Below are positions 3,002 through 26,799 of a DNA stretch of 64,000 nucleotides, in pieces; position 1 is the first letter of the stretch, and each line of letters begins with the position of its first letter. The stretch comes from Auanema rhodensis. Lineage: Eukaryota > Animalia > Nematoda. The stretch spans positions 14,322,001 through 14,386,000 of the forward strand of contig OZ059896.1 of the NCBI GenBank assembly GCA_964057225.1. The letters are read 5' to 3'. A program made the position numbers and the translations under genes. A model generated the notes under the pieces. It searched no databases and was not told the DNA's origin. It saw nothing but the letters and a program-made list of their open reading frames with translations.

Positions 3002-3255
3002 AGTTGTATAATTTTTAGTATGATCTCGAATTTGTATGGTCATTTTCCTTTGATGTATGCATTTTATAGTTATTCTTACTTTGTCGTTCACTAATCAATC
3101 TTAATAATACTCGAGATCTTTTTAAAAAAAAGTTAACTTGGTATAATAATAGTTTTATACATAAACTTCTTCTGTATCGGTTATAAGCCATGGAAACTAT
3201 TTTAAAGTTTGCTAATTTACGTGTTTTTACGTTCAATTTAGTTGCTCTTGTCTTT

Positions 3256-3767
3256 ATGAGCAACTCGACTAAAACAGGAACTGCAGCAGATTGTGTTAAA
3301 CTAGTCAATAAGAGCTATTCTGATCTACTGAATCTTCTTAGCTCGTAAGTTCTCCAATATTAATTTCTTTATTTTTGTTGCCATAAAATTTTAAGGTTTG
3401 ACAAGGGAGCAACATCAGAGTTAACACAAAGACTTCGTCAAGTTGAAACAGGTTAATGTCTTCTAAAACTTATAAATCAATATTCATTTTTTGAATTTAT
3501 AATTTATGCACTTTGTTCATAAATTAAATTTGCATTCTTTAATTTTTCAGCTGTTCAAGATTTACGAGAATCTGTAAAACAGATCCCTGATATTGGGTCA
3601 GAAGAACAGAAACAAAGAGAGAAAATAAAAGATCTTTACCGGTATTTCCAAAATTTAAAAAAATAAATAAGGAGGAGAAATATTTTAGTCAAATCAGATT
3701 GAAAGACGAACTCATTGAATCTTTCGGAAATTACAATGTTGTCGACGGAACAAGTACGACATTTTAA
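3256..3767 (+). CDS. mdt-9: Mediator subunit MED9
   Basis: Exons 3256-3344, 3396-3451, 3551-3641 and 3689-3767. The C-terminus VKQIPDIGSEEQKQREKIKDLYRQIRLKDELIESF matches the MED9 coiled-coil pattern. Confidence 0.72.
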
Positions 3768-4176
3768 TTTTTTTTTAAATTATAAATTTCTCGTATTTCG
3801 GGCTCTTGAAACGAAGAAAAACGAAAAAGTCATTATTTGCAAGCACTGTCAGAGCATAATTCTGTTAAGTGACAAAGGAATTTGGACTGATAAAACATAT
3901 GACATTCCACTCCCAACGCAGAAAAAAGGAGAACAAACTCAAAAGGTTTTTTTCTATATATTCTAGCTCTTTTATAATAGTGTATAATAGGAATCTTTAA
4001 CTGGATTCTGGTATGTGACTGATAAGTTCGATTTCGAAAATGCGGGATTCACAAATTCCGTTGATGGTTGTCGATATCTGACTTGCGCCGATTGTGATTT
4101 CGGGCCAATTGGAATTGCTGATAAAGATCCTGAGCAATATCTTATTGCTCCCAGCCGTATTCTATATAAGGAATAA
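3736..4176 (+). CDS. RABIF: RABIF/Mss4 Rab chaperone (Zn-binding), overlapping the end of MED9
   Basis: KNEKVIICKHCQSIIL...FWYVTDKFDFENAGFTNSVDGCRYLTCADCDFGPIG is the Mss4 signature. Intron at 3946-3990 and a probable one at 3754-3801. Confidence 0.9.
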
Positions 4177-22954: not shown

Positions 22955-24771
22955 TTAATTTTTTTTAATATATTTCTCAAACTCTGTAATTTTTTCTCTT
23001 ATCTTTCCCCTCTCTTTCCCTTTGGATTGTTCTTCTTCATCCATCTCTTTCCATCTTTGCCATGAAATATATGGAACGTTTTTGTCACTTAACAACTTTT
23101 GTACACCACTTTCTGAAAATAAACAAAAAATTTAAATGGCCCAGTTATTGAAAACATACTTCCAGTTCCTTTAACAATGTCTTTCAAAATTTCACTGGCT
23201 ACCACCGCACTTTCTTGTTGCGTATCAACAATGACACCTTTGGGACCATGAGCACACCATCCCGCAGCATAGACTTTAGAGTTGCAATCCATTTGCACTC
23301 GGCAGTCATCTTTCATATTAATCATACCCTTAACCAAAATATTGTTGAATATACAGATTTTTAAACCGGAACCTTTTGGTTTTTGGGAACACCATCAAGA
23401 ACTACGGTTTCGAAACCGATGCTATACACTAACAAACCGCAAGCATGTTCTTCAATATCATTAGTTAGAGAATTTTTAAACCTGAAAGTAAAAACATGAT
23501 AAAAGCTAAACAAGTTCCTTATTTACTTAACAGCTGTGACTCTATTTTCATTATTTGCAACTACTTCTATTGGACTACGATTAAACATAAATTGGCACTG
23601 TTTATCACCTTGAGCAGGACGAATTCCATCTATTAAAACCTGTTAAAATGTTAATAAGAGACTGAAAATCAGCAATGATTAAACCTGTAATAATCTCTTC
23701 TTTCTTCTGTCTTCTGTTTGGACATCAATTTTCAATTGTGCAGCTGTTTCTTCATCCAAATAAACAGAGGTATTCCATGAATTCACTTTGAACTGTTCTC
23801 GAAGTTCTTTGACTGTGAAAGAGATCTGCAAAAAAAAATAGAAACGGCAAAAATTTTGAAGAAAACGAACATCTTTTGGACCACGTCTTCCTATTATTTT
23901 AATACTATTCAAAGCAGAGGATTCCAAAGATTGAATATAGTCCGATGGAACATCAGTTGCTCGAAGTACGCTATTTGGTCCGGCACCTTAAATTTAAAAG
24001 ATGAAAAAACACTTTCAAGAAGCACAACAGACCGGCTGACAAAATTCTAGCACAATCCAAAGCCACATTACCGTTACCAACAATAATGACATTTGGCGAA
24101 TCGAGCAAAGGTACTCTCGCATTTGGAACACCACTATACCAAGATACAAAATCAGAACCCGAAAAAACATTGGTTGAATATTCACCTTAAGGAAAAACGC
24201 TATCATGAAAAATTACAAAACCAAAATACCAGGAATTTTTAATTGCCGAGGCCTATGTGCTCCATATGCTAACAAAACCGCATCATAATTATCTGTTAGC
24301 TCTTTCATTAATATGTCTTGTCCGATTCTCCAATGAAAAAACATTAACAGAATGGATGTGTCTAAACTTACTTCACATTACAAAATAATGATATTCTCTC
24401 TTTATTATTCTCAAACATCTTATCAAAGCCATGTATACAGTTCTTCACCTGAATAAAAATCTTTTTCTTTTCAAAATTATTTTTATCGAAACCTCTTGAT
24501 GATCAGGTGCAACACCGTACCGCACTAGACCAAAAGGAACAGGGGACGCATCGAAAACGTCAAGCTTAGCGTTTGAGCGTCTTATGAGAGATCGACAAGT
24601 GAACAAGCCTTCAATTATTTCAAATTAGAAAAGCTAATTCTTCTGAACATACAAACCAGCAGGTCCACTGCCCACAACTGCTATTCTGGGAACATTTGAG
24701 GAAAAAAATCTATTTGTGGGAGAGGCTATGGAAACTCGAGAATACAATAATGCATAGCCTACTTTATACAT
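22955..24771 (-). CDS. FDXR: Mitochondrial NADPH:adrenodoxin (ferredoxin) reductase
   Basis: [50 protein letters not shown] and [14 protein letters not shown]. Confidence 0.95.
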
Positions 24772-24917
24772 GCTAAAATAATAAGTAAAATATTTTAATC
24801 CTTTAGCATCGTAAGTATATTTATAGTGTTGACTATATAAAATAAATAAAATCCAAGAAAAAAAGTAATCCAAAACTTTTAACACAATAACCCAAAACCA
24901 ACAACAAAAATAGGAAT

Positions 24918-25429
24918 CTAAGAAGCAATGTGACTCAGCGTTATTTTCACAGCTGATAGTGGACGGTCACGTTGTAAAGCTTCATATTCATCACTATAAG
25001 GAAACAAATCGTCAGTCACCTAAAGCACATTTTAGTTTTCAGAATGAATACTCCAGTAATACCTGAACTGTTGTAGTTTTCATATCATAAACAATAGCCC
25101 CGTTGAATAATTTAGAAACATTTAAAACAAGCACTAAGGCACGATTTAAAGAAGCTCCCATACCATATACTGTTACCTAGAAGATAGAACTCAACTCAAA
25201 TTATAAGATAGACTGTAACCTCATTTGCTTTATTCAGTAATGCATCTTGAATCTTTTGCGATTGCGAGGCAACATTAGTCTTTCTGAGATTAACTTATAT
25301 CTTATTACAGAAAATGAACAATTACTTTGTCACATAAAATACGCTGGGATCTGAAGTGATGGGTGTGGAAACCTTACGCCTCTTAACCTCATATTCAGTC
25401 GAATTTACTCTTCCACTAGTCGATGCCAT
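24918..25429 (-). CDS. POP7: RNase P/MRP subunit POP7/RPP20 (Alba fold)
   Basis: VKRRK...VFYVTKKTN...EVTVYGMGASLNRAL...TTTVQVTDDLFP...RPLSAVKI; 4 exons. Confidence 0.9.
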
Positions 25430-25438
25430 GATAAAAGT

Positions 25439-25747
25439 TTAGAAAAACAATACAATAAAGGCCATACAAAAGCAACTGGCTCCAATCCAAGGACTTAGTC
25501 TTTCACCGATACGAGCTAGTTTCCAGAAAATACCCAATAATCTGAAAATATTTGAGGATTCCTAAAGCAATATAACTTAGTAACAAACCCCTCCTTATTA
25601 CGATCAATTAAAGAAGGAGCAAACGCACGAATATAAGCGCACGTACAAATAAGCAAAAGAAGAACGCTTATTAAACTTTGAAAATTAAATATAGCCGACT
25701 AAAATTGAAAATTTTCCCTATTCTTAAACTTATAAGCAACAAACCAG
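25439..25747 (-). CDS. TMEM167: Protein kish/TMEM167, apparently CUG-initiated
   Basis: (M)[24 protein letters not shown]...[20 protein letters not shown]. Exon 1 ends in CTG (25747-25745), directly before a 46-nt GT-AG intron. Confidence 0.9.
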
Positions 25748-25929
25748 TGTGACAGATTTATTCCCCTTGAAAAGGAGACAGGTATTCTGAAAGTTAATGG
25801 AATACTCTCGCGATTTAAACAAAAATTAAAACACTAGAGACTTTCAGAAATTTGTACTTATACTTATATTATATCTTTATTATTCAAAATATATATTAAA
25901 ACTAATCTATATTTAAATCAGCGATTGAT

Positions 25930-26015
25930 TTGTATTTTGTACGCCAACATATACTAAAGGTAGTGTGAAAAAAAGTCTCGACACGATTACCATTTACAGT
26001 ATCTCTTGTTAAAGG
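25930..26015. promoter_or_regulatory. Bidirectional promoter (kish operon / RPLP2) with m1m2-like motifs
   Basis: TCGACAC followed 10 nt later by TACAGTA and then TTAAAGG, plus TATTTTGTACGCCAACATAT. These resemble CERP2/CELE2-type germline promoter motifs known from C. elegans. Confidence 0.5.
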
Positions 26016-26168
26016 TTTCAGACAAAATTTTTAGATTCCACCTAAAATTATCTGCAGATAGCAAAGTCTCCAATAAGTTTCTATATTGTGTTTACCTCAA
26101 TTCACTTTTCTTTTTCTTGTATTAAGAATGTGTAATGTGCCTAGTCTATCGTAGTAGTTGTAGGTAAA

Positions 26169-26799
26169 ATGCGTTACGTTTCCGCTTACTTGCTCGCCGT
26201 TCTCGGTGGAAATGCTGCCCCAAAGGTAATATATATTTTTTATTTTTTTTTTTGGAATGCTTTCTAGTATTGGTTGAGAAAAATTATTTATTTTCTACCA
26301 ATTTTTTCAAATAAAGTACTTATTTTAGTTATAGGTTGATGACCTTAAGAATATCCTCGCTTCCGTCGGTATTGATGCTGATGCTGAGACCGCTAAACTT
26401 GTCGTTTCCAGACTCCAAGGAAAGACCGTTGAGGAGTTGATTGCCGAGGGAGCCAAGGGACTCGTCTCCGTAAGTTATTTAATAGTATGGAACAAAAATT
26501 TTGCTCATTCAAAAGCACTGATTTTCAACGATCTTAGTTGTTGTCAGCCGTCAACTTGAGCGACATTAATGTTACCGCATTTGGGTGAGGCACTAGATAT
26601 GTATCTTTTGTCTCAATTTCGTTAAGACATTCAACCTTTCTAAAAATTAACTTTTTAGGTTTCTGGAGGAGCCGCCGCCCCAGCTGCTGCTGCTGCTGCC
26701 CCTGCCGCCGGAGGAGCTGCCCCAGCTGCCGAGAGCAAGAAGAAGGAGGAGCCAAAGGAGGAATCCGATGATGATATGGGATTCGGTCTTTTTGACTAA
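26169..26799 (+). CDS. RPLP2: 60S acidic ribosomal protein P2
   Basis: [19 protein letters not shown]...[11 protein letters not shown]...[14 protein letters not shown]. Confidence 0.97.
26501..26632 (+). ncRNA. Intronic H/ACA snoRNA in RPLP2 intron 2
   Basis: Two hairpins (GCTCA/TGAGC with CTGA/TCAG; AGGCA/TGTCT), H box ACATTA at 26563-26568 and ACA at 26627-26629. Pockets sit about 14 nt from the boxes and are complementary to conserved LSU rRNA segments GACG-UN-GCUUUU and AUUG-UU-CACCCA. Confidence 0.82.

What the first reader, a model, noticed from the sequence alone, without database searches (positions are those of the whole stretch)
25429..25790. CUG-initiated kish/TMEM167 sharing one mRNA with POP7: a leaky-scanning dicistron
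Seen (minus strand): a TTTCAG acceptor before 25786, then a 42-nt AUG-free exon ending ...ACA CTG|gt, a modal 46-nt intron and the conserved kish sequence SAIFNFQS. From memory, TMEM167 orthologues start M-SAIFNFQS, so CUG sits where the initiator AUG should be, with a favourable -3 A. The kish stop (25441-25439) is only 9 nt (ACTTTTATC) before the POP7 AUG, with no AG acceptor or poly(A) signal between them, so SL2 trans-splicing cannot separate the cistrons. The only intervening AUG (25465) has a weak -3 U context and is in the kish frame, while the POP7 AUG has a strong context (ATC ATG G). Inference: one mature mRNA makes kish by inefficient CUG initiation and POP7 by leaky scanning or reinitiation, which is a second, translational layer of polycistrony inside a nematode operon. 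Caveat: an ATG|gtaatc at 25993 could be a conventional first exon, but it lies inside the promoter motif block.
Basis: partly seen in the sequence, partly recalled or inferred. Interest (0 to 1): 0.88.

Follow-up and report, generated by a model that had tools for sequence, protein, structure and literature searches.

The report
CUG-started kish upstream of POP7
In this nematode, and in eleven other nematode loci checked, the small secretory-pathway protein kish has CUG where its AUG start codon should be, and its gene ends a few bases before the RNase P/MRP subunit POP7, so one messenger RNA probably makes both proteins.

Summary
Assembled RNA from four public runs joins the 42-nt AUG-free exon (ending ACA CUG) to the SAIFNFQS exon. 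It then runs without a break through the kish stop, the 9-nt spacer and all POP7 exons. No RNA covers the alternative ATG|gtaatc exon at 25993.

The new result is comparative. In 12 of 12 nematode loci (clades III, IV and V) a short AUG-free leader exon ends in A-N-R-CUG|gt, exactly where other animals have AUG. Seven other invariant leucines of kish use 4-5 different codons each, whereas this one is always CUG. SL1 plus exon 1 contains no AUG in any species. kish-POP7-FDXR order is conserved, and the kish stop lies 4-28 nt from the POP7 AUG in 10 of 12 loci.

CUG initiation of kish is therefore well supported (about 0.85). A shared mRNA with POP7 translated by leaky scanning or reinitiation is likely but not shown (about 0.6). 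The scarcity of AUGs in kish is what its protein sequence predicts, so it is not evidence of selection.

A small hairpin 13-15 nt upstream of the CUG recurs with covariation. I found no published description. C. elegans annotation seems to fold kish into popl-7.

The parts
25787..25792 (-). TTTCAG 3' splice acceptor in front of exon 1; presumed spliced-leader trans-splice site
   Evidence: Sequence. The RNA contigs of X1 and X2 end exactly at 25788, which is AG plus exon 1. Depth is 0 further upstream. The leader itself was not seen.
25745..25786 (-). kish exon 1: 42-nt AUG-free leader ending in the CUG start codon
   Evidence: The joint 25745/25698 is present in contigs of X1 and X2. Homologous 27-45-nt AUG-free exons ending in CTG|gt occur in 11 other nematode loci.
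25762..25778 (-). Small hairpin (UCUCCUU-UUC-AAGGGGA) whose 3' end lies 14 nt upstream of the CUG
   Evidence: RNAfold gives -6.7 kcal/mol, z = -1.3. Hairpins of at least 5 bp ending 13-15 nt before the CUG are found in 7 of 10 clade IV/V species, against 1.7 expected. Covariation score is 0.516 against 0.239 shuffled, 0/500. The test window was chosen after seeing the data.
25745..25747 (-). CUG at the position of the kish initiator codon (context ACA CUG U)
   Evidence: CTG in 12/12 loci. It is one of only 2 codons that never vary among 45 columns with conserved degenerate amino acids. Annotated nematode kish proteins show [10 protein letters not shown] after unrelated N-terminal extensions.
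25699..25744 (-). kish intron 1 (46 nt, GT..AG)
   Evidence: Joint (X1, X2).
25589..25698 (-). kish exon 2 (SAIFNFQS ... DRNKEG)
   Evidence: Pfam PF06842 at E=6.6e-15. 91% identical to Nippostrongylus kish.
25542..25588 (-). kish intron 2 (47 nt). Its acceptor is the most plausible site for any alternative trans-splicing that would give a POP7-only mRNA.
   Evidence: The joint is in all four runs. The alternative use is inference only.
25439..25541 (-). kish exon 3 coding part, with stop TAA at 25441-25439
   Evidence: The C-terminus MAFIVLFF* aligns with its orthologues.
25463..25465 (-). The only AUG between the 5' end and the POP7 AUG. It is in the kish frame (the conserved Met of CMAF), has U at -3, and opens an 8-codon ORF ending at the kish stop.
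25430..25438 (-). 9-nt spacer ACUUUUAUC between the kish stop and the POP7 AUG; no AG and no poly(A) signal
   Evidence: Spacers of 4-28 nt occur in 10 of 12 loci.
24918..25429 (-). POP7/Rpp20 gene: exons 25429-25326, 25283-25218, 25174-25061 and 25017-24918 (stop at 24920-24918); RNA 3' end about 24850-24866
   Evidence: All joints are present in four runs, on the same contig as kish. tblastn to orthologous loci whose products carry PF12328/PF01918. Pfam on one exon alone gives only E=0.062.
24769..24778 (-). Acceptor ttttag|C ATG of the next gene (adrenodoxin reductase-like): an ordinary operon junction about 90 nt after the POP7 3' end
   Evidence: Separate contigs in X1-X3 begin at 24774, which is AG plus the exon. 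The same gene order is seen in the other nematodes.
25991..25993 (-).
   Evidence: Depth 0 in four runs. There is no ATG|GTR within 500 nt upstream of exon 1 in 10 of 11 other species.

Best explanation
The kish (TMEM167) gene of this nematode has no AUG start. Its mature mRNA begins at a trans-splice acceptor, carries a 42-nt AUG-free leader exon, and starts translation at a CUG that sits exactly where other animals have AUG, giving the normal M-SAIFNFQS protein (inferred). This CUG start is ancestral to rhabditid nematodes.

The same RNA continues 9 nt past the kish stop into POP7 (shown at contig level). A CUG captures only a fraction of scanning 40S subunits. The rest meet a single weak in-frame AUG, which opens an 8-codon ORF ending at the kish stop, and then the POP7 AUG, which has A at -3. 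POP7 would then be translated from the same mRNA by leaky scanning, with some reinitiation (inferred).

The next gene, adrenodoxin reductase, is separated in the ordinary operon way. A small conserved hairpin 13-15 nt upstream of the CUG may help to hold the scanning complex at the weak codon (speculative).
For: RNA evidence:
- One contig per run joins all kish and POP7 exons with 0 mismatches.
- Exon 1 is joined to exon 2 in X1 and X2.
- There is no coverage of the ATG exon.

CUG start:
- CTG|gt ends a short AUG-free exon in 12/12 loci from clades III, IV and V.
- SL1 plus exon 1 has no ATG in any frame in any species.
- In-frame stops lie upstream of the CTG in 11/12. In Mesorhabditis only 6 open codons remain, and CTG is the only near-cognate codon among them.
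- Codon control: the 7 other invariant Leu positions use 4-5 codons each, while position 0 is always CTG. Only 2 of 45 comparable columns are invariant.
- kish is under strong purifying selection: 32-41 synonymous-only codon differences against 7-15 amino-acid changes.
- Annotated nematode kish proteins carry unrelated N-terminal extensions that all meet at K-L-SAIF. This is what gene finders do when forced to find an ATG.

Linkage to POP7:
- kish-Rpp20-FDXR order holds, with a 4-28-nt gap in 10/12 loci, and no AG in the spacer in 7 of those 10.
- A C. elegans gene table lists Pop7 (Y62E10A.2) starting 360 nt from rla-2, with no separate kish gene (PMC4120681). A 2026 paper writes popl-7/TMEM167A (PMC13385625).

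Background:
- Nematodes lack 5MP/BZW, a restrictor of non-AUG initiation (PMC5714202).
Against: - No raw reads were available. De Bruijn contigs merge overlapping transcripts, so one contig does not prove one molecule.
- No spliced leader or poly(A) tail was seen.
- The X3 and X4 contigs break exactly at the 5' end of exon 2, so a second 5' form exists. It could skip the CUG exon.
- The lack of AUGs inside kish is what its amino-acid sequence predicts, so there is no independent sign of selection for leaky scanning.
- The CUG persists in Mesorhabditis (81-nt spacer with an acceptor and upstream AUGs) and in a Diploscapter copy with no POP7 within 3 kb. The CUG is therefore not strictly tied to the dicistronic layout.
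- Brugia has an out-of-frame AUG and a tgcag acceptor in the spacer.
- The G of CTG is also constrained by the splice donor.
- There is no translation data of any kind.
Confidence: 0.6

Rival explanations
1. There are overlapping but separate mRNAs. kish still starts at CUG, but its mRNA is cleaved and polyadenylated inside POP7, for example after the AATAAA in POP7 exon 2. POP7 is translated from its own leader-capped mRNA, made by trans-splicing at an acceptor inside kish, most plausibly the intron 2 acceptor at 25541/25542. Processing would be mutually exclusive, as in SL1-type operons.
For: - Contigs cannot tell overlapping transcripts from one molecule.
- The X3 and X4 contigs break at the exon 2 acceptor, which shows alternative 5' joins.
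- Some species have an AG just before the POP7 AUG: Brugia tgcag|cg, Caenorhabditis sp. 36 TAAAG|CG, Mesorhabditis tttag|a.
- An AATAAA lies in POP7 exon 2.
Against: - No contig in four runs ends or branches at 25541 or near the AATAAA.
- There is no AG in the spacer here or in 6 other species.
- The nearest AG upstream of the POP7 AUG lies about 50 nt inside the kish coding sequence, in a poor acceptor context.
- A non-AUG start on the upstream cistron is exactly what a leaky-scanning layout needs, and this model leaves it unexplained.
Confidence: 0.22
2. The mRNA is dicistronic, but POP7 is made mainly by termination-reinitiation after the full kish ORF or after the 8-codon [11 protein letters not shown], and not by scanning past the CUG.
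For: - The stop-to-AUG distance is kept very short, at 4-28 nt.
- kish is a short ORF of 72 codons.
- The in-frame AUG 8 codons before the stop is universal.
Against: - Reinitiation after a 72-codon ORF is normally inefficient in eukaryotes, and very short gaps usually reduce it (general knowledge).
- The internal Met is conserved in all eukaryotic kish proteins, so it says nothing specific about this layout.
- There is no sign of a TURBS-like element, although none was searched for systematically.
Confidence: 0.1
3. kish has a conventional start. A non-trans-spliced first exon ending in ATG at 25993 is spliced to exon 2 at 25698 and gives M-SAIFNFQS. The CTG exon would then be a minor or non-coding isoform.
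For: - ATG|gtaatc is a good donor.
- The 12-mer AATGGTAATCGT recurs 31 nt upstream of kish exon 1 in Caenorhabditis sp. 36.
- The contig break after the shared G in X3 and X4 would fit an ATG-ending exon.
Against: - RNA depth is zero over 25812-26160 in four runs, while the CTG exon is assembled in two.
- There is no ATG|GTR within 500 nt upstream in 10 of 11 other species, whereas the CTG exon is present in 12/12.
- The only alternative upstream sequence seen (X4) does not end in ATG.
Confidence: 0.04
4. The kish ORF is not translated in these nematodes. It is only a long 5' leader of POP7.
For: - There is no AUG start.
- No separate kish gene appears in the C. elegans table.
Against: - 80-91% amino-acid identity across nematodes with saturated synonymous sites.
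- The frame is intact in 12/12 loci.
- kish is retained in a Diploscapter copy without POP7 downstream.
Confidence: 0.02

Closest known systems
Conserved non-AUG-initiated main ORFs (e.g. eIF4G2/NAT1 GUG, and the CUG-started GTF3A, R3HCC1 and BAG1L discussed in PMC5714202)
   Same: A near-cognate codon in a good context is the only available start of a conserved protein, and it is conserved across species beyond coding need.
   Different: Here the CUG replaces the AUG of an otherwise universal 72-aa protein, in one animal lineage. It is the last codon of a trans-spliced mini-exon, is followed 4-28 nt after its ORF by a second conserved cistron, and occurs in a phylum reported to lack the 5MP restrictor.
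Dicistronic mRNAs translated by leaky scanning in animals and green algae (FlyBase 'rule-benders', PMC4528330; green algae, PMC7896298).
   Same: Two unrelated conserved ORFs lie on one capped mRNA, with a weak upstream start and few intervening AUGs.
   Different: This pair sits inside a nematode operon whose next junction is resolved by ordinary trans-splicing. The weakness of the upstream start comes from a non-AUG codon, not from a poor AUG context. The arrangement is conserved across three nematode clades.
C. elegans SL2-type and SL1-type operon junctions
   Same: Both are co-transcribed, same-strand neighbours. The downstream POP7-FDXR junction here is a normal one.
   Different: The kish-POP7 gap of 9 nt has no poly(A) signal, no U-rich element and no AG acceptor, so neither type of junction can operate in the spacer.
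Downstream hairpins that enhance weak start codons (Kozak 1990; from memory, not checked here)
   Same: A small stable hairpin sits about half a ribosome footprint from a weak start codon.
   Different: This hairpin is upstream, with its 3' end at -13 to -15, at the mRNA exit side and not the entry side. Its effect is unknown.

Membership tests
kish / TMEM167 (Pfam PF06842, DUF1242) | Significant match to the family profile | tested here: met
   Exon 2 alone gives E=6.6e-15 and 55 bits against a cut-off of 25.
kish / TMEM167 (Pfam PF06842, DUF1242) | Full-length orthology (about 72 aa, N-terminus SAIFNFQS directly after the initiator) | tested here: met
   70-aa spliced product; 91% identity to Nippostrongylus and 73-76% to insect kish at 99-100% coverage.
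POP7 / Rpp20 (PF12328, Alba-like) | Match to the Rpp20 profile | tested here: inconclusive
   Only single exons could be given by reference, and the best gave E=0.062, below the cut-off. Orthologous genes at the same position in 9 loci carry PF12328/PF01918, and tblastn links them at up to 3.6e-19.
Non-AUG-initiated protein-coding ORF | No usable AUG in the mature mRNA upstream of or at the conserved N-terminus | tested here: met
   No ATG in exon 1, or in SL1 plus exon 1, in 12/12 species. The first ATG is 8 codons before the stop.
Non-AUG-initiated protein-coding ORF | Near-cognate codon conserved beyond synonymous expectation, in a favourable context | tested here: met
   CTG in 12/12 with A at -3 in 12/12. 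The other invariant Leu positions use 4-5 codons each.
Non-AUG-initiated protein-coding ORF | Direct evidence of initiation (initiation-site ribosome profiling, N-terminal peptide) | not testable with these tools
   No ribosome profiling or proteomics was available.
Dicistronic mRNA translated by leaky scanning | Both ORFs on one mature mRNA molecule | tested here: inconclusive
   A single contig per run spans both, but contigs merge overlapping transcripts and no long reads were available.
Dicistronic mRNA translated by leaky scanning | Weak upstream start and few or no intervening AUGs | tested here: met
   CUG start and one in-frame AUG with U at -3. The low AUG count is not beyond expectation.
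Dicistronic mRNA translated by leaky scanning | Downstream translation depends on bypass of the upstream start | not testable with these tools
   Needs reporters or genome edits.
SL2-type operon junction | About 100-nt intercistronic region with an upstream poly(A) signal and a downstream trans-splice acceptor | tested here: not met
   The kish-POP7 spacer is 9 nt with no AG. POP7-FDXR, about 90 nt with ttttag and separate contigs, does meet it.
SL1-type operon junction | Trans-splice acceptor directly at the upstream poly(A) site, just before the downstream start | tested here: not met
   No AG in the spacer. The nearest AG is about 50 nt upstream, inside kish codons, in a poor context.

The most novel reading that the evidence does not exclude
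Rhabditid nematodes replaced the AUG of kish with a CUG and locked POP7 directly behind it, several hundred million years ago. The result would be a fixed-ratio, two-protein mRNA whose split is set by a start-site module: a hairpin at -14, the context UCGCCAAA and the CUG. The phylum lacks the 5MP brake on non-AUG initiation. Because gene finders need an ATG, kish is mis-annotated or missing in most nematode genomes, and in C. elegans it is hidden inside popl-7.
Probability: 0.35. Interest if true: 0.85.

Novelty: new variant of a known kind. Interest (0 to 1): 0.78.

Why it matters
It would be a phylum-deep, sequence-verifiable case of an essential housekeeping protein that depends entirely on a CUG start. 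It is coupled to a second housekeeping gene on the same mRNA, inside an operon system thought to resolve all cistrons by trans-splicing.

It can be tested directly in C. elegans (popl-7 / Y62E10A.2) by editing one codon.

It explains why nematode kish models carry unrelated N-terminal extensions or are absent. RNAi or mutants of 'popl-7' may hit two proteins at once.

It also offers a natural system for studying start-codon stringency in animals without 5MP, and a possible upstream-hairpin effect on weak start codons.

Tried and rejected
- **AUG depletion as evidence for selection: rejected.** Synonymous-codon shuffles expect only 0.2-1.0 out-of-frame ATG per kish CDS, and the observed 0-1 is not unusual.
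- **ATG|gtaatc first exon: rejected as the main form.** There is no RNA over it and it is not conserved. Its 12-mer recurs in one Caenorhabditis species, which is unexplained.
- **N-terminal extension from an upstream start: rejected.** The extensions in annotated proteins are unrelated to each other. Exon 1 varies in length and frame, and in-frame stops precede the CTG in 11/12.
- **The X4 contig's foreign 5' sequence:** it is not in the window within 3 mismatches. I treat it as a chimera or an unknown join.
- **Per-species folding energy of exon 1:** not significant on its own (z between +0.5 and -1.7). Only the positional and covariation tests support the hairpin.
- **An alternative reading of the hairpin motif, as a pyrimidine tract plus an AG|GG alternative acceptor,** could not be excluded.
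- **Literature:** ten searches found no description of a CUG-started kish or of a kish-POP7 dicistron.
- **Steinernema locus:** not on record.
- **Rfam on the window:** only a tRNA.
- **Full-length POP7 against Pfam:** not run, because the spliced protein has no reference and I did not paste it into a search tool.

Full report
**1. The observation**

On the minus strand the sequence is exactly as described.
- A TTTCAG acceptor lies at 25792-25787.
- A 42-nt exon (25786-25745) has no ATG in any frame and ends ACA CTG|gt.
- A 46-nt intron follows.
- Exon 2 starts TCG GCT ... = SAIFNFQS at 25698.
- A 47-nt intron follows.
- Exon 3 ends in TAA at 25441-25439.
- The nine bases ACTTTTATC come next, then ATG GCA ... 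of POP7 at 25429.

Exon 2 matches Pfam DUF1242 (kish) at 6.6e-15. The spliced RNA has one ATG in its first 264 nt: 25465, in the kish frame, with U at -3, opening MAFIVLFF*. The next 330 nt have thirteen.

**2. RNA evidence**

Four public RNA runs of one study hold the locus, but only as assembled contigs. In each run one contig carries all kish and POP7 exons with every intron removed (GT..AG) and no mismatch, so the CTG is not a genome error.

In X1 and X2 the contig includes the exon 1-exon 2 joint and ends at 25788, which is AG plus the 42-nt exon. That is what a de Bruijn assembly gives at a trans-splice site where several upstream sequences diverge. Depth is zero from 25812 to 26160 in all runs, so the ATG|gtaatc exon at 25993 has no support.

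In X3 and X4 the contig stops one base before exon 2. A second 5' form therefore exists there. In X4 it continues into 1.7 kb of sequence that is not in the window, which I cannot explain.

The next gene, adrenodoxin reductase-like, is on separate contigs. They start at AG plus the exon (24774), about 90 nt after the POP7 3' end, which is an ordinary operon junction.

Limits: contigs merge overlapping transcripts, and neither a leader nor a poly(A) tail was seen.

**3. Comparative evidence for the CUG**

The closest kish proteins are from strongylid nematodes (91%). Nearly all annotated rhabditid nematode kish proteins are too long, at 77-123 aa instead of 72. Their N-terminal extensions are unrelated to each other. 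In most of them, from Nippostrongylus, Necator, Caenorhabditis, Mesorhabditis, filariae, Steinernema, Aphelenchoides and Bursaphelenchus, the extension meets the conserved part at [10 protein letters not shown]. Strongyloides, a tardigrade and insects have M-SA(I/L)FNFQS.

I fetched 12 loci from 11 species (two Brugia records). I use 11 of them here, one per species, which makes 12 with the window. In all 12 the codon before TCG GCN is CTG. It is the last codon of a 27-45-nt exon that follows a strong acceptor and contains no ATG. The context is AAA CTG in eight loci, AAG CTG in three and ACA CTG in the window. Several loci share UCGCCAAACUG.

With SL1 attached there is no ATG in any frame in any species. 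In 11 of 12 an in-frame stop lies upstream of the CTG. In Mesorhabditis only six codons are open, and CTG is the only near-cognate codon among them. Exon length and frame vary, so the exon is not coding upstream of the CTG.

The codon control is decisive. Among seven species, 45 alignment columns keep the same degenerate amino acid, and only two keep the same codon: Gln7 CAA and this CTG. The seven other invariant leucines use four or five codons each.

kish itself is under strong purifying selection, with 32-41 synonymous-only codon differences against 7-15 replacements. It must therefore be translated, and the CUG is the only credible start. The splice donor explains the final G, but not the initial C or the A at -3.

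**4. Linkage to POP7**

The order kish-Rpp20-FDXR is kept in Nippostrongylus, Parelaphostrongylus, two Caenorhabditis species, Pristionchus, Mesorhabditis, Brugia and Dirofilaria. Bursaphelenchus and Aphelenchoides keep the kish-Rpp20 pair.

The distance from the kish stop to the first POP7 ATG is:

| Species | Distance (nt) |
|---|---|
| Caenorhabditis brenneri | 4 |
| Caenorhabditis sp. 36 | 4 |
| Pristionchus | 7 |
| Window | 9 |
| Dirofilaria | 20 |
| Nippostrongylus | 21 |
| Brugia | 21 |
| Aphelenchoides | 23 |
| Bursaphelenchus | 28 |
| Parelaphostrongylus | 28 |
| Mesorhabditis | 81 |

Seven of the ten short spacers contain no AG. The N-termini of POP7 align from that first ATG.

There are exceptions. 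Mesorhabditis has a tttag acceptor and upstream ATGs in its spacer. One Diploscapter copy has no POP7 within 3 kb. Brugia has an upstream ATG and a tgcag in its spacer. The CUG persists in all of these, so CUG use does not strictly require the dicistronic layout.

For C. elegans, a published gene table lists rla-2, then the Pop7 orthologue Y62E10A.2 starting 360 nt away, then FDXR, with no kish gene (PMC4120681). A 2026 paper gives popl-7 the human counterpart TMEM167A (PMC13385625). No C. elegans or C. briggsae kish of 39-192 aa appeared in three protein searches. This suggests that kish is hidden inside the popl-7 gene model.

**5. Mechanism**

Shown:
- the exon structure;
- CTG in the RNA;
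- co-assembly of kish and POP7;
- deep conservation of the CUG and of the tight spacing.

Inferred:
- trans-splicing at 25787;
- initiation at the CUG with Met-tRNAi;
- bypass of the CUG by most 40S subunits;
- partial capture by the weak in-frame AUG, which gives an 8-codon ORF ending 9 nt before POP7;
- initiation at the POP7 AUG (ATC AUG G).

Nematodes are reported to lack 5MP/BZW, which restricts non-AUG initiation (PMC5714202), so a CUG may be relatively efficient there.

The kish amino-acid sequence rarely allows out-of-frame ATGs, with 0.2-1.0 expected. It makes leaky scanning possible, but it does not show selection for it.

**6. A side finding**

Exon 1 holds a small hairpin (window 25778-25762, 7 bp) whose 3' end is 14 nt before the CUG. 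Hairpins of at least 5 bp ending 13-15 nt before the CUG occur in 7 of 10 clade IV/V species, against 1.7 expected (P about 0.0004). That test ignores phylogeny, and I chose the window after seeing the data.

The stems differ: CUCCUU/AAGGGG, GAUCC/GGGUC with a GGAA loop, GCCAA/UUGGC with a UUCG loop. On a MAFFT alignment, 76% of cells pair against 59.6% shuffled, and the covariation score is 0.516 against 0.239 (0/500), higher than all slid controls.

Single-sequence energies are not significant. The filariae lack the hairpin. The same motif could instead be a pyrimidine tract plus an AG|GG alternative acceptor.

**7. Comparison with what is known, and novelty**

Non-AUG main-ORF starts and leaky-scanning dicistrons are known kinds. 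What I did not find in ten literature searches is:
- a universal housekeeping protein that has lost its AUG in a whole animal lineage;
- a CUG as the last codon of a trans-spliced mini-exon;
- a conserved dicistron nested in a nematode operon.

Other first-stage notes on this genome list further very tight gene pairs: MED9/RABIF in this window, NDUFAF8/UTP23 and rpb-11/IWR1. I did not check them. They suggest that the layout may not be unique.

**8. Verdict**

- CUG-initiated kish: about 0.85.
- One mRNA serving both proteins by leaky scanning or reinitiation: about 0.6.
- Main rival, overlapping separately processed mRNAs: about 0.2.

I rate this a new variant of a known kind, interest 0.78.

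Noticed in passing
window 25762-25778 (-); L001, L005-L008, L010, L012 exon 1: A small hairpin ends 13-15 nt upstream of the conserved CUG in most clade IV/V nematodes. The stems differ and some loops are UUCG or GNRA tetraloops. The filariae lack it. It may instead be a pyrimidine tract plus an AG|GG alternative acceptor.
   Followed up: partly
It may be a promoter element of the divergent rla-2/kish pair, or it may be chance.
   Followed up: partly
window 25699 (-), run X4 contig 8: A 2433-nt contig joins kish exon 2 to about 1.7 kb of sequence whose first 30 nt are absent from the window. The X3 and X4 contigs both break exactly at the 5' end of exon 2, so another 5' form of the transcript exists.
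   Followed up: partly
window 24769-24866 (-): The POP7-to-adrenodoxin-reductase junction looks like a standard operon junction: about 90 nt, a ttttag acceptor one base before the ATG, and separate contigs. It contrasts with the 9-nt kish-POP7 junction.
   Followed up: partly
window 26169-26267 (+): The ribosomal protein P2 (rla-2) gene is divergent from kish, about 380 nt away, as in Caenorhabditis (L002, L011). The window is syntenic with the C. elegans chromosome IV Y62E10A region (PMC4120681).
   Followed up: partly
window 3241-4176: Another first-stage note proposes a second overlapping pair (MED9/RABIF) on one AUG-poor mRNA in this window. Notes elsewhere in the genome list NDUFAF8/UTP23 and rpb-11/IWR1 pairs 3-12 nt apart. 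I checked none of them.
   Followed up: no
L006 (Diploscapter pachys): This kish copy keeps the CUG exon but has no POP7 within 3 kb downstream. A second Diploscapter kish (P0011) exists and was not fetched.
   Followed up: partly
Protein searches: kish models in nematode genome annotations carry spurious N-terminal extensions. Models are missing for C. elegans, C. briggsae, Ascaris and many others in the set searched. This is probably a systematic annotation error caused by the missing ATG.
   Followed up: partly
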